Part shown: piece after piece, positions 9,611 to 63,737 of the stretch
How the letters are laid out: the number at the start of each line of letters is the position of its first letter
Position numbering within the stretch: the first letter of the stretch is position 1
Assembly: GCF_016432865.1 (NCBI RefSeq)
Contig: NC_067400.1
Span: forward strand, 623,782,001-623,846,000
Source of the DNA: Antechinus flavipes
Lineage: Eukaryota
Direction: 5' to 3'
Length of the DNA: 64,000 bases
The notes under the pieces: model-generated
The model's database searches: none
Told to the model about the DNA's origin: nothing
The model's input: the letters and a program-made list of their open reading frames with translations, nothing else
Translations under genes and position numbers: made by a program

Positions 9611-15898
<6,288 letters not shown>

Positions 15899-25102: not shown

Positions 25103-26846
25103 ATGGCGGGCGTGGGCTTCGAGGAGTTCTCGGCGCCGCCGGGCTCCGAGCTGGCGCTGCCCCCGCTCTTCGGCGGCCACATCCTGGAGTCGGAGCTGGA
25201 GACCGAGGTGGAGTTCGTGGGCGGAGCCCTGGGGGGGCCCGGGCTCCGGGAGCGGGAGGAAGAGGAGGAGGCCGCCCGGGGCAGGCGGCGCCGCCAGCGC
25301 GAGCTGAGCCGCCGCAAGTACCAGGCGCTGGGCCGGCGCTGCCGGGAAATCGAGCAGGTCAGAGCCCCTGGGCGCTCCCCCACTGCTTCCCGTTGTCGGA
25401 GAAAGCCCTGTTGGAGCCCGTTTCTGGGACGGAAATGTTGTCACGTGACGGGGTGGGTGGCCCAGGAGGGGGCGGGACCCTCTGACCCTTTCTGTCCCCT
25501 CAGGTGAACGAGCGGGTCCTGAACAGGCTTCACCAGGTGCAGAGAATCACAAGGAGGCTCAGGCAGGAGCGGAGGTAAAGGGGCGCCGGGCCTTGGGGCA
25601 CAGGTAGGGTAAAGCCTCTGCTTTCAGAGCCGCGGCTCCCTGCCAGGAGGCTGGGCCCACCGAGGGACCGAGGTCAGTGGTTCCCGAGCAGCTCTGCCAG
25701 GCAGATCCCCGCTGGGAAACCTTAAAGGGCTCCCCGGGGCCATCGGCCCCAGATGGGCCCCCAGCTGCTTCCCCCCGGTTCCAGTCCCAGGCCTGGAGAC
25801 CCTCGGCTCCCGGGGACTCTCCCCCTCCTCCCTCTAACGGCCCTTCCCTTCCTTGGGAAAGCCCCGGTGCCAGCCCCCCTGCCCTCCAGGTTCTGCACCC
25901 CCCAGTGCACGCAGTAAGCACCGGACACGGTCTAACAGGAGACTGTTAACGAGCAGATGGAGCTTCACGTGGCGGGGACTAGGGGCACCACGGCTGCTCT
26001 CCTAGGACCAACGGGGAGCTGGGGCTGAAGGCGGGACCAGGGGACCGATGGGAGGGGATTCAGGGAGGACTCTAGGGCTTCCATCTTCAGAGAACGGGTC
26101 CTCCGACAGCCGGAGCAGACCGAGGTTGTAGAGGGAAGGTGGGGGTAAGGAGGGCAGAGCCACGAGTCCCACCCACAGCGCAGGGGTCGAGTGACACAAC
26201 AGTGACAGGAGCTGGTTTTAAGACCCCTGAAAAAGCAGAGGGAGAACCAGCTTCTCCTGTCCCGGCCTCAGGTTTCTGATGCGAGTCCTGGACTCCTATG
26301 GAGACGATTACCGGAAGAGCCAGTTCACTATCGTCCTGGAGGTGAGGCCTTGGGGCCCGGGGGGTGGGGGGCCTCTGGTCCTAGAAGGGGAGGACACCGG
26401 CTCCTTGCCTTGATCCCACTGCAGGACGAGGGCAGCCAAGGCCCCGACGCCCCCACCCCAGGAAATGCAGAGAACGAGCCACCAGAAAAGGAAAGCCTGT
26501 CCCCTCCCCCTCGGCGGCCCCCCGAGCCTGGCAGTCCCCCACCGGGGGAAGGCCCCAGCGGAAAGAAAAGGCGGAGGGCGCCCCGGGATGGGCGCCGAGG
26601 TGGGGTACTGCTAACCCCAGAGCTGGACCCGGGCCAGGTAAGCACCTAGAGACACGGGATGGGGAGGGGGGCGAGCCCAGGACTCGCGGCCTCACCTTGT
26701 TCCTCATCCCTCAGATCAAAGTGGAGGATGACTTTGGCTTCGAGCCAGAAGAGGCGCTCACCCCAGGATGGGTAGCCCGAGGCCCGGACAAGCTGCTGTC
26801 CTACCCCACTTTGGCCAGCCCTCCCTTTGACATCACCCCCCAATAA
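25103..26846 (+). CDS. TFPT: TCF3 fusion partner / INO80 complex subunit F (Amida), about 246 aa
   Basis: Exons 25103-25357, 25504-25574, 26272-26341, 26425-26637, 26715-26846. Translation [38 protein letters not shown]...[13 protein letters not shown]...[14 protein letters not shown]. The TAA stop lies inside AATAAA at 26842-26847. Confidence 0.96.
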
Positions 26847-26941: not shown

Positions 26942-28349
26942 TCACAGATTCTTGAGCCACTGGAGCGAAGGGCCCTCGGGTTCCTGAGGATGGCTGGGGA
27001 TGTCATGCATCTTGCCATTATCTCGAACAGGAACTAGGGGTGGGAAAGAAGGAAGAAAGCTCACTGGCCTGGTCCCTCTTTCCACCCCCCGCCCCCCACG
27101 CCAAGGCCCATTTTCCAGGCAGGTACTACTCACCAGGGTAGTTGTAAGGGGTCGCCTGGTTGATCATGCCTGAGTACTTGGTATAGGGGCTTAAAACAGG
27201 GAGGATCAGAGCTGCCGGGGAGAAGGGCAGAGTTAGAGTCTGGGGGCCTCCAGGGAACGGCAAAGCAAAGGGGAAGCGGCCCTGCCCCCACCTCCAAGAG
27301 CTCCCTTCTAGCTGGGGGAGAGGTGGGAAGTGCATCCAGAGCACCGGGTGTCCAGGGAGGGGCTACAAGGGGGCTGAGCTCAGTGGCACCCTTCCCACCC
27401 TTCTAGCTGGGGGCAAGGGGGGGTTGAGCTCAGTGACACCCTTCCCCCCCTTCTAGCTGGGGGCGAGGGGGGCTGAGGTCAGTGGCACCCCCTTTCTCTT
27501 CTAGCTGGGGGCGAGGGGGGCTGAGCTCAGTGACACCCTTCCCACCCTTCTAGCTGGGGGCGAGGGGGCTGAGGTCAGTGACACCCTTCCCACCCTTCTA
27601 GCTGGGGGCGAGGGGGCTGAGGTCAGTGACACCCTTCCCACCCTTCTAGCTGGGGGCGAGGGGGCTGAGGTCAGTGACACCCTTCCCACCCTTCTAGCTG
27701 GGGGCGAGAGGGCTGAGGTCAGTGGCACCCTTCCCACCCTTCTAGCTGGGGGCGAGGGGGCTGAGGTCAGTGGCACCCTTCCCACCCTTCTAGCTGGGGG
27801 CGAGGGGGCTGAGGTCAGTGACACCCCCTTTCTCTTCTAGCTGGGGGCGAGGGGGCTGAGCTCAGTGACACCCCCTTTCTCTTCTAGCAGAGGGTGGAGG
27901 GGGCCAGGAGGCATCCAGATCTCGGGGTACACAGGGAGGCTCTAGAAGGGGGGCTGAGGTCAGTGACACACTCACTCACGCCCTGTTCTGCGACCTTGAC
28001 CCTGCCCCTCCCCAAACCCGGGACCCAGGGCTCACCCGTGGTGCCGATGGCGAAGGACGCGACCAACACGGGCTCCTTGGCCCAGGCATCCTTCAGGAAC
28101 CGTCCCAGTTCTAGCGGGGTAAAGACAAGATCTTTTCACTTTAAACTCAGACCCAGCCACACGTCCCGACCCCCGACCCCTCCATTCGCGATCTTGACCC
28201 GAACCACCTCACTGGGGTGGCCACAGACCCTCTCCCCGCGCGCGACCTCGGGCCCCATCTGCTCGGAGCTGTGCGCGCCGCCCGCAGACGCCCCCGTCCC
28301 CAGCCCAAACCCTTCCCGGCCCCAGACGCCCGGACTCACTGCCCGCCAT
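26942..28349 (-). CDS. NDUFA3: NADH:ubiquinone oxidoreductase subunit A3, 84 aa
   Basis: Exons 28349-28340, 28110-28036, 27211-27134, 27033-26942. Translation [84 protein letters not shown]. Minus-strand AATAAA at 26910-26915. Confidence 0.97.
27300..27890. repeat. 48-bp minisatellite in NDUFA3 intron 2
   Basis: ttctagctgg at 27401, 27451, 27499, 27548, 27596, 27644, 27692, 27740, 27788, 27835 and a variant at 27882; about 12 copies including degenerate edges. Confidence 0.97.
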
Positions 28350-29656: not shown

Positions 29657-30019
29657 GGGAGGGGACTTTCAGGGCCTCCTGGCTATGGCCTGGCCTGAAG
29701 AAAGGACCCGGCAGAGCTGGCCCGAGCTCCGGAGGCAGCGGGAGTGCAGGGGGGGCGAGCTCTGCCCGCGGGGCGTCCGAGCAGCTTCTCCCCCGGAGAA
29801 CCGGGACCGAGGCCTCCGCCTGTCTGTGTATCTACTGCCCCCCGCCCCCCGCCTCCAGCACAGAGCCTGGAGTAGGCGCTTATCATCCCTGCCTCATCCC
29901 CTGGAGAACCCGGGAAATGGGCACGTCCAGCCGCAGCTGGGGAGAGCCGGCCTAGAAGGCGGGCGTCTCCTTCCGGAAGGAGCCAGTGGCCGCAGAGCCG
30001 AGCACGTGGGGAGCGTGTG

Positions 30020-30358
30020 CCCCCCTGTGCCCGCCCCGCTGTGCCCGCCCCGCTGTGCCCGCGCCCCTGTGCCCGCCCCGCTGTGCCCGCGCCCCGCTGT
30101 GTCCGCCCCCTGTGCCTGCCCCCCTGTGCCTGCCCCCCTGTGTCCGCCCCCTGTGCCCGCCCCCTGTGCCCGCCCCCTTGTGCCGCGCCCTGCTGTGTCC
30201 GCCCCCTGTGCCTGCCCCCCTGTGTCTGCCCCCTGTGCCTGCCCCCCTGTGTCCGCCCCCTGTGCCCGCCCCCTGTGCCCGCGCCCCTGTGCCCGCCCCG
30301 CTGTGCCCGCCCCCCTGTGCCCACCCCGCTGTGCCCGCGCCCCTGTGCCCGCGCCCCT
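30020..30358. repeat. ~14-17-bp GC-rich minisatellite
   Basis: Repeated gccccctgtgccc / cgctgtgcccgc units; accounts for the Pro/Cys-rich ORFs. Confidence 0.95.
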
Positions 30359-35285: not shown

Positions 35286-35700
35286 TAGAGCCTAACATGA
35301 TGTTCTAAGGTAGTGAGCATGTGGGGTCCACTCTCCCGTTCATTCATTTACACCAAGAGGTTGAGCCTTGCCCAGGGCCACGAGGGGAACGTCTGAGGTG
35401 AGTCCCGACCGCCCTCTGGGCACTGGGCCCCTGCTGCCAGGCGGGCAGAGGGAGGGCCGAGAGGAGCCCGGGATGGACAGCCGAGAGGACCCTGGGGGGC
35501 GGAGAACGCGAAGGGAAGCCGAGGATGCAGAGAAATGTGGACAGATGGACGGAGCCCGAGGTGTGGCCTGCGGGACTTGGAGGAAGGCAGCACCCGGCTC
35601 CCCCGCCCCCTCCCCCCTACCCCACCACAAACACAGCCCACTCCGGCCGGTCTTGACCTTTTATTCCACAAGCCAGAAGCAGGGCTGGGACCCCGGGGGC

Positions 35701-37142
35701 TCACGCCGGGGCCTCCCCAGGCCGGGGCTGCTTCCTCCTGCTCCACCACCTGACCAGGGTCTTGGTCCCCCACCTTCCGAAGAAGAGCAGACTCAGCCCC
35801 GCCAGGCTCAGCTGGGCCAGGTTGAAGAAGAAGGCAGGAGAGACAACGTGGCGCGCGGCTCTCACTTCGGAGTGGGGGGACAAAGGATTCAGAGCTGGGG
35901 GTGCTCCCCACACACAGAAGTGACGCCCTGAGGGGCTCAACCCCTCTCCGAGCCCGCGTCAAGGCCAGGAAAGGCCGGGCCGGGCTCGGGCCACTGCTGA
36001 GTGCGGACCCCAGCGTCTGGGAGCTCTGAGGCCGGGGTCCCGTTCTCCCCCTCCCTGGGGCGGAGGGGCTCTCACCTGTCATCTCCAGCATCAGCGCCTT
36101 GCTGGGGTGAGACCAGAGGTATGGGGAGAAGGGGGAGTGCCCGTAGCAGTAGTAGGGACCCACATGGTCCTGGGTCATTGCCTGGATCCGGAAGCTGATC
36201 ACAGAGCGACTGCTGTTCATCCTCAGGAGGGGCCTGCGCTCCCGGGCCACGGCAAAGTGGGGGAGACCCAGGTGGGACTGGCAGAGCAAGGCCACGCTCC
36301 TCCCCCCGGCCACCGCCCGGCCCAGCTCGGCCCAGAAGGCAGGCGGGGGGTACAGCCCTGCGGAGAGACAAAGCCGGGAGCTGGGCCGCCAGGGGGCTGG
36401 CTGCTCTCAGATGGGGCTCCGGGGAAGGGGCTGGGGGAGCCGGCCTTGGGGAGGGGCTCGGGGGAAGGGGCTGGGGGGCCATCAGGGAGCCCACCTTGGG
36501 GAGGGGCTCGGGGCTCACCCGTCACCACCAGCTCCACGGGCAGACTGGGTCTGGACCAGGAGGCCTTGTACAGGTAGCGGCAGGTGTAGAGGCCCCCGGA
36601 GGCCTCTGAGATGTGGCCGATGAAAAAGGAGACCTGGTTCCAGAAGAAGAAGCTGTTTGGCGCCTTTTCGCCCAGACTGGTGAGGACGCCTTCCTTCTGC
36701 AGCCGGAAGCGGCTGGCCTAGACTGGAGCCGAGCACTGCAGGGCCATGTAGGAGCCCCTCCGGACCAGCGGGGAGGGCTCCACAGAGAGGACCGGCCTGT
36801 GGGACCCTGGAGTGGAAGGGAGTCAGAGCTGGGGGCTCCGGGAGAGGCCCACCCCCATCCCCACACAGCCCCCCTGGGAGGTGGAGGAGAACCACGCCAG
36901 GGCCGAGGGAGCTGCTGCTGGGGCTGAGGACTCACCCTCCGGGGACCTCTGGTTCTGGCCCAGACACAGCCCTGCAGGAGAGGCCCCCAAGAGTCGGCTA
37001 GTTCCCCTCGTGCCCCCGCCCGAGCGCCCCGCGCCCCCCACCCCAGCTCCCCTCCCAGGGCCCGGGCCAGTACTGCAGTGACCGCCCGGTGAGGGGCCCG
37101 GGTCTCACCAAGGCAGAGCAGGACGCAGAGCCCCGGCCCCAT
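35701..37142 (-). pseudogene. Two-Ig-domain LRC-type receptor (FCAR/GP6/LILRA/NCR1-like architecture) with one premature stop
   Basis: Signal exon 37142-37109 (34 nt, MGPGLCVLLCLG); mini-exon 36971-36936 (36 nt); Ig1 36806-36519 (SHRPVLSVEPSPLVRRGSYMALQCSAPV*ASRFRLQKEG...LYTCRYLYKASWSRPSLPVELVVT); Ig2 36357-36076 (GLYPPPAFWAELG...LLCQ...YYCYGHSPFSPYLWSHPSKALMLEMT); probable TM/tail exon 35864-35701. All junctions are phase 1. TAG at 36720-36718. Minus-strand AATAAA at 35660-35665. Confidence 0.85.
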
Positions 37143-37166
37143 GCTCTTGGCCAAGCTGAAGCCCGG

Positions 37167-37535
37167 GGGGATGGGGAGCACCCGGGCCCGTGGGGGGGGG
37201 GGAGCACCCGGGCCCGTGGGGGAGGGGGAGCACCCGGGCCCGTGGGGGAGGGGGCACCAGGGCCCGTGGGGGGGGGGAGCACCGGGCCCGTGGGGGAGGG
37301 GGCACCAGGGCCCGTGGGGGGGGGGAGCACCGGGCCCGTGGGGGAGGGGGAGCACCCGGGCCCGTGGGGGGGGGAGCACCCGGGCCGTGGGGGGGGGGAG
37401 CACCCGGGCCCGTGGGGGAGGGGGAGCACCCGGGCCCGTGGGGGGGGGGAGCACCCGGGCCCGTGGGGGGGGGAGCACCCGGCCCGTGGGGGGGGGGAGC
37501 ACCCGGGCCCGTGGGGGAGGGGGCACCAGGGCCCT
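37167..37535. repeat. G-rich ~27-bp minisatellite directly upstream of the Ig-receptor ATG
   Basis: Repeated ggggagcacccgggcccgtggg(g)n, about 13 copies. Confidence 0.95.
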
Positions 37536-38546: not shown

Positions 38547-39130
38547 TAACCCCCCAGCAGGCCGTGGGCTCCATGTGTAACCCCCAGCAGGCCACGGGCT
38601 CCATGTGTAATCCCCAGCAGGCCACAGGCTCCTTTGTAACCCCCAGCAAGCCACAGGCTCCTTTGTAACCCCCAGCAGGCCACAGGCTCTGTGTGTAACC
38701 CCCAACAGGCCGTGGGTTCCATGTGTAACCCCCAGCAGGCCACGGGCTCCATGTGTAACCCCCAGCAGGCCACAGGCTCCTTTGTAACCCCCAACAGGCT
38801 GCAGGCTCCATGTGTAACCCCCAGCAGGCCACGGGCTCCATGTGTAACCCCCAACAGGCTGCGGGCTCCATGTGGTAACCCCCAGCAGGCCATGGGCTCT
38901 GTGTGTAACCCCCAGCAGGCTTCAGGCTTCATGGGTAACCCCCAATAGGCCAGGTGTCCATGTGGTAACCCCCAGCAGGCCACAGGCTCCTTTGTAACCC
39001 CCAACAGGCCGTGGGTTCCATGTGTAACCCCCAGCAGGCCACAGGCTCCTTTGTAACCCCCAACAGGCCGCAGGCTCCGTGGGTAACCTCAGCAGGCTGT
39101 GGGCTCCATATATAACCCACAACAGGCCGG
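38547..39130. repeat. 29/30-bp minisatellite with two interspersed unit types
   Basis: taacccccagcaggccacgggctccatgtg (30 bp) and taacccccagcaggccacaggctcctttg (29 bp); about 19-20 copies. Confidence 0.95.
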
Positions 39131-39394
39131 GGCTCCTTGAAGGTAGGGAGTGTTTGTTCAGAGGAGCTGCCTTTTTTTCTTTTTGAACATCTCCAGTGCT
39201 TGGGGCAGTGGTTTGGGGCTGAGGGCTGACAGGGGCCATAACCACGCTGGGGGGTTGGGGGAATCGGCCATCAGGAAGGATCTGGCCCCGTTCCCCCCCA
39301 CTCCCCCACCCCGTATATTTACACCTTTTATTTCCTCGAAGAGCCCTCACCTCCCCCTCCCTCAGAGAGCCATCCCAGGAACAAATAAAAAGGC

Positions 39395-39597
39395 AGGGGG
39401 AGAGAGAGAGGAAGAGGGGGAGAGAGAGAGGAAGAGGGGGAGAGAGGAAGAGGGGGGGAGAGAGAGGAAGAGGGGGAGAGAGAGGAAGAGGGGGAGAGAG
39501 AGAGAGGAAGAGGGGGAGAGAAAGGAAGAGGGGGAGAGAGAGGAAGAGGGGGGGAGAGAGAGGAAGAGGGGGAGAGAGAGAGGAAGAGCGGGAGGGC
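39395..39597. repeat. Polypurine GA-rich array
   Basis: Repeated gagagagaggaagagggg; almost no pyrimidines on the + strand. Confidence 0.95.
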
Positions 39598-40062
39598 GGG
39601 AAGAGATCGGCAGCTTATCAGAAGTCCCGAACGAGCCCCCAAATCTAAGAGTTTGCGCTCCCTTGGTGCCCCTCTCCAGGGAGGGAGGGCAGCGTTTTCT
39701 CGCTCCCTTTCCATTCTGCCCCCCCCCCCCATGATGACACGCGCTGGCTTCCGGCTGGGGCTTGGAGGTTTTCTTGTTCCTTCCTTTCGAGGTCACCGGC
39801 TAAGTCTCTTGTTCGGCTCGGCTTCCTCCGGGGTGCCTCAGTTTCCCGCGACGTCCTTATTCCCCACGTGACCCGTCGCCCCGAGACCAGAGGCGCGGAG
39901 TGGTCGCGGGCAGGCAGGGCTGGGGCGGGCTGGAGCACGCCGGGAGTTCCCTGCTGCCCGCTTCCCAGTCAGACCTCCTCCCGGAGGAGCTTCACACCCA
40001 TGTCCGGGCAGAAACGGGCGCGTGTGCGCCGGAGACCTCCCGCGAAGCTTGGCGCAGACCGG

Positions 40063-40495
40063 CTCTCCCCGGCTCTTCCCGGCTCTCCCCGGTTCTCCCC
40101 GGTTCTTCCTGGCTCTCCCCGGGCTCCCTCCCGTTCTCCCCGGCTCTCCCCGGCCTCCTTCCGGTTCTCTCCGGTTCTCCCCGGCTCTTCCCGGCTCTCC
40201 CCGGTTCTCCTCGGTTCTCCCCGGCCTCCCTCCGGTTCTCTCCGGTTCTCCCCGGCTCTCCCCGGTTCTCCCCGGCCTCCCTCCGGTTCTCCCCGGTTCT
40301 CCCTGGCTCTCCCCGGGTTCCCTCCCGTTCTCCCCGGCTCTCCCCGGCTCTCCCCGGGCTCCCTCCGGTTCTCCTCGGTTCTCCCCGGCTCTCCCCGGCT
40401 CTCCCCGGCTCTCCCCGGCTCTCCCCGGCCTCCCTCCGGTTCTCCCCGGTTCTCCCCGGCTCTCCCCGACCTCCCCCCGGCTCTTGCCGGCCTCC
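40063..40495. repeat. 10-bp CpG-containing array
   Basis: Repeated tctccccggc / tctccccggt variants, about 40 copies. Confidence 0.95.
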
Positions 40496-41704
40496 GGCAC
40501 CCCGGACCAGGGGCTGGAGTAGAGGGACACCTAGTGGACAAAACAGGCGGAGCATGCCCTTTCTGCTCGATCAATAGCTCACTTCCCCACAGGTAGAGGG
40601 GAGAGGGCAGCGGACACGTTGGAGCCAAGGGCACGGGGTGGGGGGGAAGGGGCGCCCCCCTCGCCTCCACTCTGTTGGCCGCAGTAGGACTCAGAGCTAG
40701 AAGGGGCTTCCGAAACCACCTAGTTCAAGTCCACTGGGAAAAGGAGTCCCAGAGGAGGCGAGGGGGGAAGCGGAAGCTGGAATTGGAACTCGGGTCCTTT
40801 GGGGCAGCCGGGAAGGCTCGTCTCTCCGACTTCAAACGCGGCCTCGGACACTTTGTAGCTGTCTGGCCCAGGGGCAAGTCAGGTGACCCCGTTTGCCTCA
40901 GTTTCCTTTCCTGTAAAACGAGCTGGAGAAGGGAATGGCTAACTGCTCTGGTATCCCTCCCAAGGAAAGCTCAAGTGGGACCTAACTGGAAAAATCACCA
41001 ACAACAATCGCCTTTGGCTCCAGGTCCTGATATCAGGAGGGGGAGGAGGGGGAAAGAGGAGAAGGAGGGAGGAGGAAGGAGGGAAGGAGGCGGGGAGGAG
41101 GGAGGAGGAGGGGGAAAGAGGAGGGAGAATGAGGAGGAGGGAGGAGGGAGGAGAGCACGGTAGAACGGAGAGGTCTCTGAACCGCAGTAAATCCCAGCAT
41201 CCTCCCTGGACACGTAGCGTGTGAGCTGGGCTTTAAAGGTTGAGAGAAATTTCAAATGTGGGGATGGCGCGAACCAAAGGGCAGGGGTGGGAGAGCTTGG
41301 CCACGCCCCGAAGCCCGAAGGCTCTGCCATCCACGCGTTGGCTCCGGGACGGGCAGGGCGACGACTATAGAGCTGGAAGGGTCCTTAGAGGGAATTGGGT
41401 CCAATTCCTTGATTTTACAGATGTGGAAACTGAGGCAGCGAGCAAAGGGAGGCCGCAAGCAGATTGCGGACACTCGGAGAGGAGAGGGCCGTGAGTGTCT
41501 GAGGCGGGACCTGCCTCCTGCCGCTCGCTGGCTTTGCCGGGTCCCGAGAAGAGCAGCGATGGCTTGGCAGAAATGCCCCTGGTCCCTGCTGCCCCCGAGG
41601 CTCTGAGCTCGGGAGAGCGGTACCTGGCGGTGCTGAGCGCAGACCTGGGGCCTCTGGGAGGAGGAGCGGGGCTGGAGGAGGAGGAGCGGGCTGGAGAAGG
41701 AAGA

Positions 41705-41815
41705 GCGGGCTGGGGGGAGGATGGTGGGGCTGGGGGGAGGATGATGGGGCTGGGGGGAGGATGATGGGTCTGGGGGGAGGATGGTGAGTCTGGGGAGAGG
41801 ATGGTGGGGCTGGGT
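41705..41815. repeat. ~20-bp array
   Basis: Repeated gggctggggggaggatgRtg, about 5 copies. Confidence 0.85.
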
Positions 41816-52146: not shown

Positions 52147-52328
52147 NNNNNNNNNNNNNNNNNNNNNNNNNNNNNNNNNNNNNNNNNNNNNNNNNNNNNN
52201 NNNNNNNNNNNNNNNNNNNNNNNNNNNNNNNNNNNNNNNNNNNNNNNNNNNNNNNNNNNNNNNNNNNNNNNNNNNNNNNNNNNNNNNNNNNNNNNNNNNN
52301 NNNNNNNNNNNNNNNNNNNNNNNNNNNN
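52147..52328. other. Assembly gap (182 N)
   Basis: Run of N. Confidence 1.
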
Positions 52329-61999: not shown

Positions 62000-63237
62000 T
62001 TAGGTGGCTCCCGCACCTCCAGCCCCTCGATCCCCGGGATGCTGACGGCAGCACATCCCCCAGGTGCTTGAGGGCAGAGCCAGTAGCAGGAAGGAGCCGC
62101 CCCCCAGGAGCAGCAGGGCAGCAGCTGCGAGGGCGCAGGCCACTGACCAGGAATACTCGTACCCCAGCCAAGGGACGGGGCCTGGCCCGGTCCTGGCCAG
62201 CAGCTCCCGGACCCCCTGGCGGAACAGCCCGAGGCTCACCAGCAACAAAAGTCCTGCGGGGAGAGAATAGGAAAAGGGATCCAGCGCTCCACTCAGCCGC
62301 CCGGGGCCCGTGGTCTCCAGCTCCCAGCGGGCACTGCTGGGGTCCACAAATCTCAGACAGCAACAATCCCTAGAACTACCACTCCCGGCCTGCAGCACCG
62401 GCCAGTCAACAAACATTTATAAGCGCCTACTGTGTGCTAGGCGCTGAGTGGCTGAGGCTCCAAGAACTACAACTGCTGGGGAGCAAACCCCTCAGAGACT
62501 TCCCCCCGCCCCCATACATTATTGCCCCTCACAATATGATGCGCTCTCTGGAAATCCCAACTTCCAGCATGCAACTGGGCTGAATTCTGCAAATCGCCAG
62601 CTTTGGGCCAGGCGGAGCACAGGGCCTGGGGAACCGGGCAGATATGGACCAGTCCCTACCTGAGAGGCTGAAGCAGACGGCCGCGTGCGTGAGCAGGAAC
62701 TCGGCGCCTTTGCTGAGGACCATGATGACACAGATGCAGCCTAGGACCGTGATAGCCAGGGCCAGAGTGGCAGTGATGGCTGCAGCTACTCCCAGCTCTG
62801 GGGGGGGGGGGGGAGAGGGGAATAAAGGAGGGGAGGGGAGGAGAGGAGAATGAAAAAGAGGAGGGGAGTGGGGAGGAGAGAACAGGAGAGGGGAGGGGGG
62901 GGGGAAAAGCACATTAGAGACAGCTCCATTATGGCCTACCTGGGGAAGGCAAGCAGTGGCATTGTAGAAACAGGAGCCCCTCCCCGACTGCCCGGGCAAC
63001 TTTAGGGAGGTGACTTCATTTCTCTGGCACTTTTCCTCATCTGTAAAATGGGCTGGAGGGAGTTTAGAATGGAATGGAGCCGGGTGACTTCTGGCATTCC
63101 CTGAGGCTCCTTCGGGGCCTGAATCTCAGCCCAGGAGACCCCCGGGGGCTAAGAGGACCTACCTTTTTTCGTTGTCCTCTGCAGGATCCGGTTGTTCTCC
63201 CCCGTGGTGAAGAATCTGAAGTAAGAGCAGTTTGCCT
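62000..63237 (-). CDS. CACNG6: Voltage-dependent calcium channel gamma-6 subunit, last three exons; exon 1 not found in the window
   Basis: Exons 63237-63163 (EANCSYFRFFTTGENNRILQRTTKK), 62797-62660 (ELGVAAAI...MVLSKGAEFLL...CFSLSG), 62253-62000 (LLLLVSL...YEYSWS...GAT*). Phases are compatible. Confidence 0.93.
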
Positions 63238-63737
63238 CTGCGGGAAGAAGACACAGATATGTGGGGGATGCTAAAGTCAGGGAAAGGGAGAGAAGTGGAT
63301 GGAAGGACAAAGGAGGAGGGGAAGATCTGGCTCTCATAGCTAGCCGATTGTGGAACAGTCATTGTCCTCTGTGTATCCACTTCCTCTTCTGGGAAATGGG
63401 AATAATGAGCCCCAGCCTCCCTATGCTACGGTCCAGAGAGAAGTGGGTGGAGCTTAAGGGAAGGAGGGAAGGAGTCCGCTGGCCAAGTCCGGGTCCTTGT
63501 ATCACAGGTCTCCCCACTGCAGTTTAGAGTCTGGCCCCTTTTCCCAAGAAGGCCGATGGCGGCCCCCTAGGCCGGAGAGTGGCCTCTGTGATCTCCAGGA
63601 TGGTCTGGCTCCTGTCTCCTCCATCTCCCGCTTTCCTGAGTCTGTTCTCGGGTTTACAGAGAGAAGATCTAGGCAAACTGAGTCACAAATGAGGGGCTGA
63701 CTCTCCGACTGGGAAGAAGCCTCAGCGCTATCTGACG

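What the first reader, a model, noticed from the sequence alone, without database searches (positions are those of the whole stretch)
35701..37142. A lone, inverted two-Ig receptor gene occupies the OSCAR/TARM1/VSTM1 slot
The exon layout (34-nt signal exon, 36-nt mini-exon, two phase-1 Ig exons, one TM-plus-short-tail exon) is that of LRC receptors. The sequence does not look like OSCAR, TARM1 or VSTM1. Ig2 (GLY..P...YYCYG....PYLWSHPSKAL) is closer to FCAR/GP6/LILR D2. Human OSCAR, TARM1 and VSTM1 are transcribed opposite to NDUFA3, whereas this gene is on the same strand. It may be a marsupial-specific receptor lineage, or evidence that an FCAR/GP6-like gene once lay on this side of the housekeeping block.
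Basis: partly seen in the sequence, partly recalled or inferred. Interest (0 to 1): 0.75.

Follow-up and report, generated by a model that had tools for sequence, protein, structure and literature searches.

The report
Disabled lone immune-receptor gene beside NDUFA3
This marsupial carries a single two-domain immune-receptor gene between CACNG6 and NDUFA3 that belongs to an old marsupial-only lineage unrelated to OSCAR, and here it is still transcribed but switched off by an early stop codon.

Summary
The five-exon gene on the minus strand is real: exons of 34, 36, 288 and 282 nt, then a TM-plus-tail exon, with AATAAA. It is the only LRC-type Ig gene in the ~34 kb between CACNG6 and NDUFA3, and it lies on the same strand as both.

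Dunnart, devil and Dromiciops assemblies show the same gene, order and orientation. So this is not a mis-assembly, and the lineage is at least as old as Australidelphia. NCBI names the orthologs 'platelet glycoprotein VI-like'.

Ig2 is an A2-type domain, like LILR, GP6 and FCAR. Clades with OSCAR-d2 and TARM1-d2 proxies are rejected. Ig1 fits A1 profiles best, but the tree does not resolve it. TARM1-d1 and VSTM1 could not be tested.

The TM exon is the LRC NxxR type with Gln replacing Arg, and the tail has no tyrosine.

In this genome the gene is broken:
- Codon 53 is TAG, where relatives have CAG. The TAG lies on at least three haplotypes and in RNA-like contigs.
- A 15-nt deletion removed the ancestral TM-exon acceptor. 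A new upstream AG is used instead.

Verdict: a transcribed, recently disabled member of a little-described marsupial LRC lineage. The scan had already noted the TAG on this same window (s1-189122), not on other DNA.

The parts
37109..37142 (-). Exon 1: start codon and first part of the signal peptide (34 nt, ends in phase 1)
   Evidence: Conserved with the GTGAG donor in dunnart, devil and Dromiciops.
36936..36971 (-). Exon 2: 36-nt mini-exon, the end of the signal peptide
   Evidence: It is 96-98% identical in dunnart and devil, with conserved AG and GT.
36519..36806 (-). Exon 3: Ig1 (288 nt, phase 1 at both ends)
   Evidence: Pfam Ig_2 hit. RNA-like contig of X3 covers 36521-36728.
36718..36720 (-). 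Premature TAG at codon 53. Relatives have CAG (Gln).
   Evidence: Devil and dunnart have Q53. X1 (two haplotype contigs) and X3 read TAG. X4 and X6 (organisms B and C) read CAG.
36076..36357 (-). Exon 4: Ig2 (282 nt, phase 1 at both ends), with an NSS glycosylation sequon
   Evidence: X3 contig covers 36076-36358.
35865..35866 (-). New splice acceptor AG. Dunnart and devil have TG here.
   Evidence: Alignment A3. X3 has a GT..AG joint from 36076 to 35864.
35844..35845 (-). Site of a 15-nt deletion that removed the ancestral acceptor and the first 8 nt of the exon
   Evidence: X6 (organism C) carries the 15 nt here. Dunnart and devil keep the ancestral acceptor.
35701..35864 (-). Exon 5, coding part: short link, TM helix (NLAQ form of the NxxR motif), 25-aa tail without Tyr, TGA stop
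35646..35700 (-). 3' UTR with AATAAA at 35665-35660. RNA-like contigs end near 35646.
26945..28099 (-). NDUFA3 (three exons detected: 28037-28099, 27135-27215, 26945-27034), about 7.3 kb downstream on the same strand
   Evidence: Pfam PF14987, E 7e-7 to 1e-11. Stop-free stretches listed.
25310..25357 (+). TFPT/INO80F exon, a weak hit. TFPT lies tail to tail with NDUFA3.
   Evidence: E 0.0015, below Pfam's cut-off. TFPT is called at the same place in dunnart and Dromiciops.
62003..63358 (-). CACNG6-like 3' exons that bound the slot on the far side
   Evidence: The last exon matches Cav gamma-1 at E 2.8e-11.

Best explanation
This is the local copy of an old marsupial gene of the leukocyte receptor complex (LRC). 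In devil, dunnart and Dromiciops the gene encodes a type I membrane protein. That protein has two C2-type Ig domains of the LILR/GP6/FCAR kind (A1-like plus A2) and almost no stalk. Its membrane helix derives from the FcR-gamma-pairing NxxR type but has Gln in place of Arg. Its tail is short, basic, Trp-rich and has no tyrosine. The gene sits alone between CACNG6 and NDUFA3 and is transcribed in the same direction as both.

Inferred function in relatives: a ligand-binding surface protein, with a predicted TM-less isoform in devil, that does not signal through FcR-gamma or ITIMs. It may act as a modulator or decoy. The ligand is unknown.

In this genome's species two lineage-specific changes occurred. 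First, a 15-nt deletion removed the ancestral acceptor of the TM exon, and a new upstream AG that keeps the frame is used instead. Second, a C-to-T change turned codon 53 (CAG) into TAG. The RNA is still made and spliced. However, the stop lies about 480 nt before the last exon junction, so by the 50-55-nt rule the message is a predicted nonsense-mediated-decay target. It can give at most a 52-residue fragment. The locus is therefore a transcribed, recently disabled unitary pseudogene, or a null allele that is fixed or very common.
For: - Exon model and stop codon.
- Orthologs at 85/85/78/55% identity with an intact Gln53.
- Same order and orientation (receptor, NDUFA3, TFPT) in dunnart and Dromiciops, and the window is colinear with dunnart and devil.
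- The acceptor deletion and the new AG.
- Reads: TAG in two haplotype contigs of X1 and in the divergent X3. CAG in organisms B and C. The 15 nt are present in organism C. X3 has a 58-nt GT..AG junction contig joining 36076 to 35864, contigs that stop at exon edges, and none in intron 3.
- Open reading frames kept in three lineages, with dN/dS 0.4-0.8.
- Group A affinity: PDB scores, tree, AU tests, hhalign (SLOT d1 best against A1 at score 109; d2 best against M2/A2 at 118/117), and fold search topped by LILRB4, GPVI, NKp46 and KIR.
- TM homology with NxxR helices.
- No protein of this species was returned for this gene in either word search.
Against: - The run kinds are not on record. That X3 is RNA is inferred from its 86 Mb of contigs, its exon-edge contigs and the junction contig.
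- The junction contig has 28 and 30 letters on its two sides, just under the tool's 31-letter rule.
- X3 also holds an unspliced contig across intron 4.
- Exons 1-2 and the 5' part of Ig1 are not covered by X3.
- Fixation of the TAG is inferred from three haplotypes only.
- Nonsense-mediated decay is predicted, not measured.
- The place of Ig1 is unresolved in the tree.
- The function in relatives is inference from sequence alone.
Confidence: 0.72

Rival explanations
1. The gene is functional in this species. The TAG is an assembly error, a rare allele or is read through, so an intact receptor is made.
For: Apart from the TAG the frame is open. All splice sites are canonical. The replaced acceptor keeps the frame. 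The gene is transcribed and spliced.
Against: The TAG is present in the window, in both haplotype contigs of X1 and in the divergent RNA-like X3. No T>C change at 36719, which editing of the UAG would give, is listed there. No protein of this species was returned for the gene. By my reading, the base after the stop (UAG G) is not a known read-through context.
Confidence: 0.08
2. It is the marsupial ortholog of OSCAR, strongly diverged and locally inverted.
For: It lies next to NDUFA3, where eutherian OSCAR lies. It has the same five-exon plan with one exon for TM plus tail. Ig1 plus the B1 cluster (A1BG d1, IGSF1 d1/d6, used as OSCAR-d1 proxies) is not rejected (p-AU 0.375).
Against: - Human OSCAR is the weakest LRC two-Ig match (71 bits against 95-102 for GPVI and LILRB4; 52 bits for Ig1).
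- Ig2 with the OSCAR-d2 proxies is rejected (p 0.022).
- hhalign ranks B1 and B2 low.
- OSCAR is not among the first 50 fold matches.
- The TM has Gln, not the Arg of NxxR.
- The opossum has a true OSCAR ortholog (47% identical to human, reciprocal best hit, NxxR TM) in the MHC region (PMC1351924, PMC6557307).
Confidence: 0.04
3. It is related to TARM1/VSTM1, the other genes of the eutherian slot, at least in Ig1. It may be a hybrid of a group-B first domain and a group-A second domain.
For: - It occupies that position.
- In the careful per-domain tree Ig1 falls outside the well-supported A1 cluster (98/97) and inside the group-B polytomy.
- The B3 domain type (TARM1 d1/VSTM1) is described as lineage-specific, with no marsupial counterpart known (PMC6557307).
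Against: - Ig2 with the TARM1-d2 proxies (IGSF1 d3/d11, opossum M4) is rejected (p 0.006).
- Ig1 plus A1 is not rejected (p 0.36).
- Ig1 scores clearly best against the A1 profile (109 against 59-89).
- There is no NxxR arginine (TARM1) and no ITIM (VSTM1).
Confidence: 0.1
4. It is a recent copy that moved into the slot from the large marsupial M1M2/GP6-like clusters elsewhere in the LRC.
For: NCBI names the orthologs 'platelet glycoprotein VI-like'.
Against: The clade lies outside the marsupial M1M2 plus eutherian group A clade, on long stem branches. It is only 30-36% identical to M1M2 proteins of the same species. It is present at the same place in Dromiciops. The GP6 clade (100/98) excludes it.
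Confidence: 0.03

Closest known systems
Gene models 'platelet glycoprotein VI-like' of Sarcophilus harrisii, Sminthopsis crassicaudata and Dromiciops gliroides (P0001/P0002, P0003, P0157)
   Same: These are orthologs. They are 85, 78 and 55% identical, have the same five exons and lie in the same place upstream of NDUFA3 on the same strand. They share the Gln-bearing TM and the tail. The devil's 'two LRC-like exons' on scaffold GL850161 with Rps9..Tfpt (PMC6557307) are probably this gene.
   Different: Their reading frames are open (Gln53) and they keep the ancestral TM-exon acceptor. The name is automatic; they are not GP6 orthologs. Several models have wrong 5' ends.
Eutherian group A two-Ig LRC receptors (GPVI, LILRB4/LILRA5, FcaRI, NKp46, KIR2D)
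   Same: Two C2-type Ig domains. The signal peptide is split over a 34-nt and a 36-nt exon, and the Ig exons are phase 1. Ig2 is A2-type. The predicted fold superposes at TM 0.8-0.9. The TM exon is homologous to the NxxR helix.
   Different: Only 30-41% identical per domain. It branches outside all of them together with marsupial M1M2. It lies on the CACNG6/NDUFA3 side of the housekeeping block. It has no stalk, Arg is replaced by Gln, and the tail has no ITIM or other tyrosine.
Marsupial M1M2 ('MAIR') LRC genes (for example P0181, P0200, P0182, P0179, P0189)
   Same: Marsupial two-Ig LRC genes of the A1-A2 plan. The M2 profile is the best hhalign match of Ig2.
   Different: They form their own well-supported clades that exclude this gene. 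They keep the NxxR arginine. In opossum they are linked to Ttyh1/Leng9/Rps9, on the other side of the block (PMC6557307).
OSCAR, TARM1 and VSTM1, the genes that fill this interval in eutherians
   Same: Position between CACNG6 and NDUFA3. A small two-Ig (or one-Ig) receptor gene with one exon for TM plus tail.
   Different: Opposite orientation relative to NDUFA3 (human orientation taken from established gene records, not tested here). Ig2 is not of their types by proxy tests. There is no NxxR arginine and no ITIM. The opossum OSCAR ortholog lies in the MHC region (PMC1351924).

Membership tests
Leukocyte receptor complex (LRC) Ig-like receptor superfamily | Extracellular C2-type Ig domains of the LRC type | tested here: met
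   Every PDB sequence hit above the shown cut-off is an LRC protein. LRC-Ig HMM: 68 and 44+21 bits. AF2 model pLDDT 91.6, and the listed fold matches are LRC receptors.
Leukocyte receptor complex (LRC) Ig-like receptor superfamily | Signal peptide split over a roughly 34-nt exon and a 36-nt exon; one phase-1 exon per Ig domain | tested here: met
Leukocyte receptor complex (LRC) Ig-like receptor superfamily | Location in the extended LRC, bounded by CACNG6 | tested here: met
   NDUFA3, weak TFPT hit, CACNG6-like exons. The flanking genes are named in PMC6557307.
LRC group A (LILR/KIR/GP6/FCAR/NCR1; A1-A2 plan) | Membrane-proximal domain of A2 type | tested here: met
   In the A2 cluster (98/78), apart from all group B domains (96/89*). 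AU rejects B2 (p 0.022) and B4 (p 0.006). hhalign gives M2/A2 118/117.
LRC group A (LILR/KIR/GP6/FCAR/NCR1; A1-A2 plan) | N-terminal domain of A1 type | tested here: inconclusive
   The tree puts it outside the A1 cluster (98/97*). AU does not reject a clade with A1 (p 0.36), nor with B1 (p 0.375). hhalign scores best against A1 (109 against 89 or less).
LRC group A (LILR/KIR/GP6/FCAR/NCR1; A1-A2 plan) | Position on the RPS9/TTYH1 side of the housekeeping block | tested here: not met
   It lies on the NDUFA3/CACNG6 side in four species.
GP6 (platelet glycoprotein VI), the name NCBI gives the orthologs | Groups with GP6 orthologs; mucin-like stalk; NxxR TM; Pro-rich tail | tested here: not met
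   GP6 d1 (98/91*) and d2 (100/98*) clades exclude it. Ig2 joins the TM exon directly. The GP6 tails seen (NLVR..EDWHSRKK..PLPPLP) have no counterpart here.
OSCAR | Domains group with OSCAR d1 (B1) and d2 (B2) | tested here: not met
   d2 with B2 proxies is rejected. d1 with B1 proxies is not rejected. Human OSCAR is the weakest LRC match. Only proxies (A1BG, IGSF1) could be put in the tree.
OSCAR | TM helix with the NxxR arginine (FcR-gamma pairing) | tested here: not met
   NLAQ here, SLAQ in devil and dunnart, SLTQ in Dromiciops. The requirement comes from PMC6557307.
TARM1 / VSTM1 | d2 of B4 type (with IGSF1 d3/d9/d11) | tested here: not met
   AU p 0.006. hhalign score 79 against 117-118 for A2/M2.
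TARM1 / VSTM1 | d1 of B3 type | not testable with these tools
   No TARM1 or VSTM1 sequence could be obtained by reference. None appeared in the listed PDB matches, in the top 150 representatives or in the named hits.
Unitary (non-processed) pseudogene | A disabling change confirmed in independent reads, intact orthologs at the same locus, no functional paralog nearby | tested here: met
   TAG on three haplotypes, CAG in two sister taxa. Open orthologs. No other Ig exon in the window. Fixation in the species was not tested.

The most novel reading that the evidence does not exclude
The gene is a surviving early branch of the LRC that split off before marsupial M1M2 genes and eutherian LILR/KIR/GP6/FCAR/NCR1 diverged, or even a hybrid of a group-B-like first domain and an A2 second domain. 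It would still sit beside CACNG6/NDUFA3, the side where eutherians keep only group B genes. That would mark this interval as an ancestral home of group A-type receptors and give a living link between the two LRC groups. Its Gln-for-Arg helix would be an old, conserved uncoupling from FcR-gamma.
Probability: 0.2. Interest if true: 0.55.

Novelty: new member of a known kind. Interest (0 to 1): 0.35.

Why it matters
The gene shows that the interval which in eutherians holds OSCAR, TARM1 and VSTM1 holds something different in Australidelphian marsupials. That gene is a single, differently oriented, group A-like receptor that has stayed in place for tens of millions of years. This bears on how the two LRC gene groups were laid out in the therian ancestor.

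The conserved Arg-to-Gln change in an otherwise typical FcR-gamma-pairing helix offers a natural test of what that helix does without its arginine.

The antechinus copy is a datable, very recent loss. The stop codon and the acceptor replacement are absent from two close relatives. That is useful for studies of immune-gene turnover in a genus used as a model of stress-induced immune collapse.

The finding also shows that the automatic name 'platelet glycoprotein VI-like' is misleading.

Tried and rejected
- A word search with the NDUFA3 last-exon stretch, meant to reach NDUFA3 loci of other marsupials and eutherians for synteny, found nothing. Koala, wombat, possum, wallaby, opossum and eutherian intervals therefore could not be fetched.
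- TFPT exons were too short and weak to serve as a query.
- The supplements of PMC6557307, which should list the devil exons of scaffold GL850161 and their class, are not held.
- Pfam on 30 long stop-free stretches between 21 and 63 kb gave only the weak INO80F and Claudin_2 hits. The GC-rich islands upstream of the gene are minisatellites, not genes.
- NCBIfam gave nothing, as expected for a prokaryote-oriented library.
- P0001 has no exact gene on record.
- The representative search ranks by summed score, so its top 150 are mostly multi-Ig proteins and hold no OSCAR or TARM1.
- Rejected readings: mis-assembly; a GP6 ortholog; a recent copy from M1M2 clusters; an OSCAR ortholog.
- The exons of this window's model were never joined into one protein for any search or fold. 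They were searched one by one by reference, with Ig1 in two pieces around the stop. The two-domain tree and the fold used the devil, dunnart and Dromiciops proteins as the tools returned them.
Full report
OBSERVATION

On the minus strand the finding's coordinates hold a complete five-exon gene.
- E1 37142-37109: 34 nt, starts at the ATG, codes MGPGLCVLLCL.
- E2 36971-36936: 36 nt.
- E3 36806-36519: 288 nt, Ig1.
- E4 36357-36076: 282 nt, Ig2.
- E5 35864-35701: a short link, a hydrophobic helix, a 25-residue tail and TGA.
- AATAAA lies at 35665-35660.
- Every intron starts with GT and ends with AG. The Ig exons are phase 1 at both ends.

Two things are missing from this entry. First, Ig1 holds an in-frame TAG at 36720-36718, which is codon 53. 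The same reader filed this separately as s1-189122. Second, the acceptor of E5 is not the ancestral one (see 'State of the gene in this genome').

SURROUNDINGS

NDUFA3 lies on the same strand 7.3 kb downstream. Three of its exons hit Pfam PF14987 at E 7e-7 to 1e-11. A weak INO80F/TFPT hit follows on the plus strand.

At the other end of the window, minus-strand exons match the calcium-channel gamma family. The last exon (62003-62416) aligns to Cav gamma-1 residues 144-220 at E 2.8e-11. An upstream exon gives weak Claudin_2 and gamma-1 hits. By position this is CACNG6, which PMC6557307 names as the LRC-flanking gene.

An HMM built from 250 LRC Ig domains, run over all six frames, finds only the two Ig exons in the 64 kb. 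The next hit has E about 2. The GC-rich islands at 37-42 kb are minisatellites.

So the roughly 34-kb interval between CACNG6 and NDUFA3 holds exactly one LRC gene, on the same strand as both neighbours.

RELATIVES AND SYNTENY

A word search was run with Ig2. The query was the stop-free read-through stretch 35351-36406, restricted to region 17-111 so that full-length proteins qualified. It found three proteins:
- Two devil models, both 85% identical.
- One dunnart model, 78% identical.

A profile search added a Dromiciops protein at 55% identity. Three of the four models are named 'platelet glycoprotein VI-like' by NCBI; the second devil model (P0002) is named 'cleavage and polyadenylation specificity factor subunit 6-like'. 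No protein of this window's own species came back for this gene.

The dunnart and Dromiciops loci both show receptor (+), NDUFA3 (+), TFPT (-). The window is colinear with the dunnart and devil loci from 47 kb to 25 kb. Exons 1 and 2 and their splice sites are conserved.

The arrangement is thus shared by four assemblies of two marsupial orders. It is not a mis-assembly and goes back at least to the ancestor of Australidelphia.

A full HMMER scan of 1.84 billion representatives found nothing outside this cluster with more than about 41% identity to either domain. The nearest hits are eutherian LILR, KIR-like and GP6 proteins.

WHICH FAMILY

Against solved structures, two-Ig chains score as follows: LILRB4 102, GPVI 95, LILRB1 D3D4 90, LILRA5 85, FcaRI 81, NKp46 79 and OSCAR 71 bits. 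The single-domain searches give the same picture.

I built a per-domain ML tree (89 domains, LG+C20). OSCAR, TARM1 and VSTM1 sequences could not be obtained by reference. Following the clusters of PMC6557307, I used these proxies:
- A1BG and IGSF1 d1/d6 for OSCAR d1 (cluster B1).
- A1BG d2-d5 for OSCAR d2 (B2).
- IGSF1 d3/d11 and opossum M4 domains for TARM1 d2 (B4).

Results:
- The four species form one clade for each domain (100/99 for d1 and 100/100 for d2), on long stems.
- Ig2 sits at the base of the A2 cluster (98/78).
- AU tests reject Ig2 with B2 (p 0.022) and with B4 (p 0.006).
- Ig1 falls outside the A1 cluster (98/97) in an unresolved group-B polytomy.
- AU rejects neither Ig1+A1 (p 0.36) nor Ig1+B1 (p 0.375).
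- Profile-profile comparison favours A1 for Ig1 (score 109 against 89 or less) and M2/A2 for Ig2 (118/117 against 79 or less).
- A two-domain tree puts the clade outside marsupial M1M2 plus eutherian GP6/FCAR/NCR1/LILR (81/80).
- An AF2 model of the devil ectodomain (pLDDT 91.6) matches LILRB4, GPVI, NKp46, KIR and FcaRI at TM 0.8-0.9. OSCAR is not in the first 50 matches. The input alignment held group A sequences, so the domain angle may lean that way.

My reading is an early-branching A1-A2 (group A-like) gene. It is not GP6, whose clade excludes it, and not OSCAR.

The literature agrees on OSCAR. The opossum ortholog is 47% identical to human OSCAR, is a reciprocal best hit and has an NxxR helix. 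It lies in the MHC region on chromosome 2 (PMC1351924, PMC6557307).

The 'two LRC-like exons' that PMC6557307 lists on devil scaffold GL850161 with Rps9..Tfpt are probably this gene. The paper does not discuss them, and the supplement is not held.

TM AND TAIL

The helix aligns with the canonical LRC helix (..GNVIRLSLAGLVLVLLG.. in M1M2 proteins). It reads NLAQLSLAGLSLLFFG here, SLAQ.. in devil and dunnart, and SLTQ.. in Dromiciops. So this is the NxxR exon with Gln in place of the arginine that pairs with FcR-gamma, in all four species.

The tail (..WW.RR..P.EAPA) is conserved and has no tyrosine, hence no ITIM. There is no stalk.

dN/dS between species is 0.4-0.8 for the Ig exons and 0.5-1.0 for the short TM exon. 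That is a loose constraint typical of immune receptors, and the frames have stayed open in three lineages.

One devil model (P0001) uses an upstream acceptor and ends without a helix, which would give a secreted form.

STATE OF THE GENE IN THIS GENOME

Alignment with dunnart and devil shows that this genome lacks the stretch holding the ancestral acceptor (..CCCACAG|AT GCC GCC..). It has an AG 20 nt upstream where the others have TG.

Contigs of four public runs were laid on 35500-37160. The findings from that call:
- X1 is organism A, with genome-sized contigs. It shows two haplotype contigs over 36651-36794, and both carry TAG.
- X3 is organism A with only 86 Mb of contigs. It differs from the window at about 1.4% of sites and also carries TAG.
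- X3's contigs stop at exon edges (35646-35866, 36076-36358, 36521-36728), and none lie in intron 3.
- A 58-nt X3 contig joins 36076 to 35864 with GT..AG ends. This is the shape a splice junction takes in a k=31 graph when an unspliced path is also present, and one is (35837-36105).
- I therefore take X3 for RNA and the new acceptor as used. The run kind is not on record, and the two sides of the junction contig (28 and 30 letters) fall just under the tool's 31-letter rule.
- X4 and X6 are organisms B and C, about 5% diverged. Both read G at 36720, which gives CAG.
- X6 carries the 15 nt (CCCACAGATGCCGCC on the gene's strand) at 35844/35845.

Both lesions are therefore specific to organism A. 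The deletion was bridged by a frame-keeping new acceptor (VRAARHVV in place of DAAI). The stop was not bridged. It lies about 480 nt upstream of the last exon junction, so the mRNA is a predicted nonsense-mediated-decay target. It can encode only 52 residues.

I did not verify the species. The run organisms are coded.

VERDICT

It is incomplete in that the gene is broken.

The gene is a distinct lineage known so far only from marsupials, is group A-like in at least Ig2, and is neither OSCAR nor GP6. Still open are the affinity of Ig1 (TARM1 d1 and VSTM1 untested), the gene's presence outside Dasyuromorphia and Microbiotheria, its ligand and its function.

It is a new, essentially undescribed member of a known receptor superfamily. 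It is of moderate interest to comparative immunogenetics and is not a new kind of system.

- The N run at 52147-52328 was left alone.
- The window's exons were never joined. In local scripts Ig1 was read with X at the stop.

Noticed in passing
window 37161-37534, 38551-39136, 39395-39605, 40059-40495, 41656-41814: A run of GC-rich minisatellites (periods 24, 30, 20, 10 and 20 nt) starts 19 nt upstream of the receptor's ATG. They account for the 'GC islands' between 37 and 42 kb. No protein family hits there.
   Followed up: partly
window 27368-27873: A 48-nt unit repeated 10.5 times (91% matches) inside an NDUFA3 intron. The dunnart locus has a similar array (multiple blastn hits).
   Followed up: no
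window 30019-30358: A 14-nt GC-rich unit repeated about 24 times, between NDUFA3 and the receptor.
   Followed up: no
window 62003-63358 (minus strand): The 3' exons of a CACNG6-like gene. The last exon matches Cav gamma-1 at E 2.8e-11. The gene runs off the window's end.
   Followed up: partly
P0002 (L002), P0003 (L001), P0157 (L003): The public models of the orthologs are inconsistent. One devil model is fused to an upstream GC-rich reading frame and named 'CPSF6-like'. The dunnart model lacks the conserved ATG exon and reads the mini-exon in another frame. The Dromiciops model seems to read through intron 2.
   Followed up: partly
L002 about 11150-11880: The older devil assembly has a 100-N gap where the Ig1 exon should be. 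It was not filled or looked up.
   Followed up: no
P0186 (GP6, Lemur catta), TM region: This GP6 model reads NLAQ where other GP6 proteins read NLVR or NLAR. This is the same Arg-to-Gln change in the FcR-gamma-pairing motif as in the gene studied here. It may be real or a model or sequencing error.
   Followed up: no
window 36500-36800: Haplotype diversity is high in organism A. X1's second haplotype and X3 differ from the window at 1.4-3% of sites over the Ig1 exon, yet all share the TAG.
   Followed up: partly
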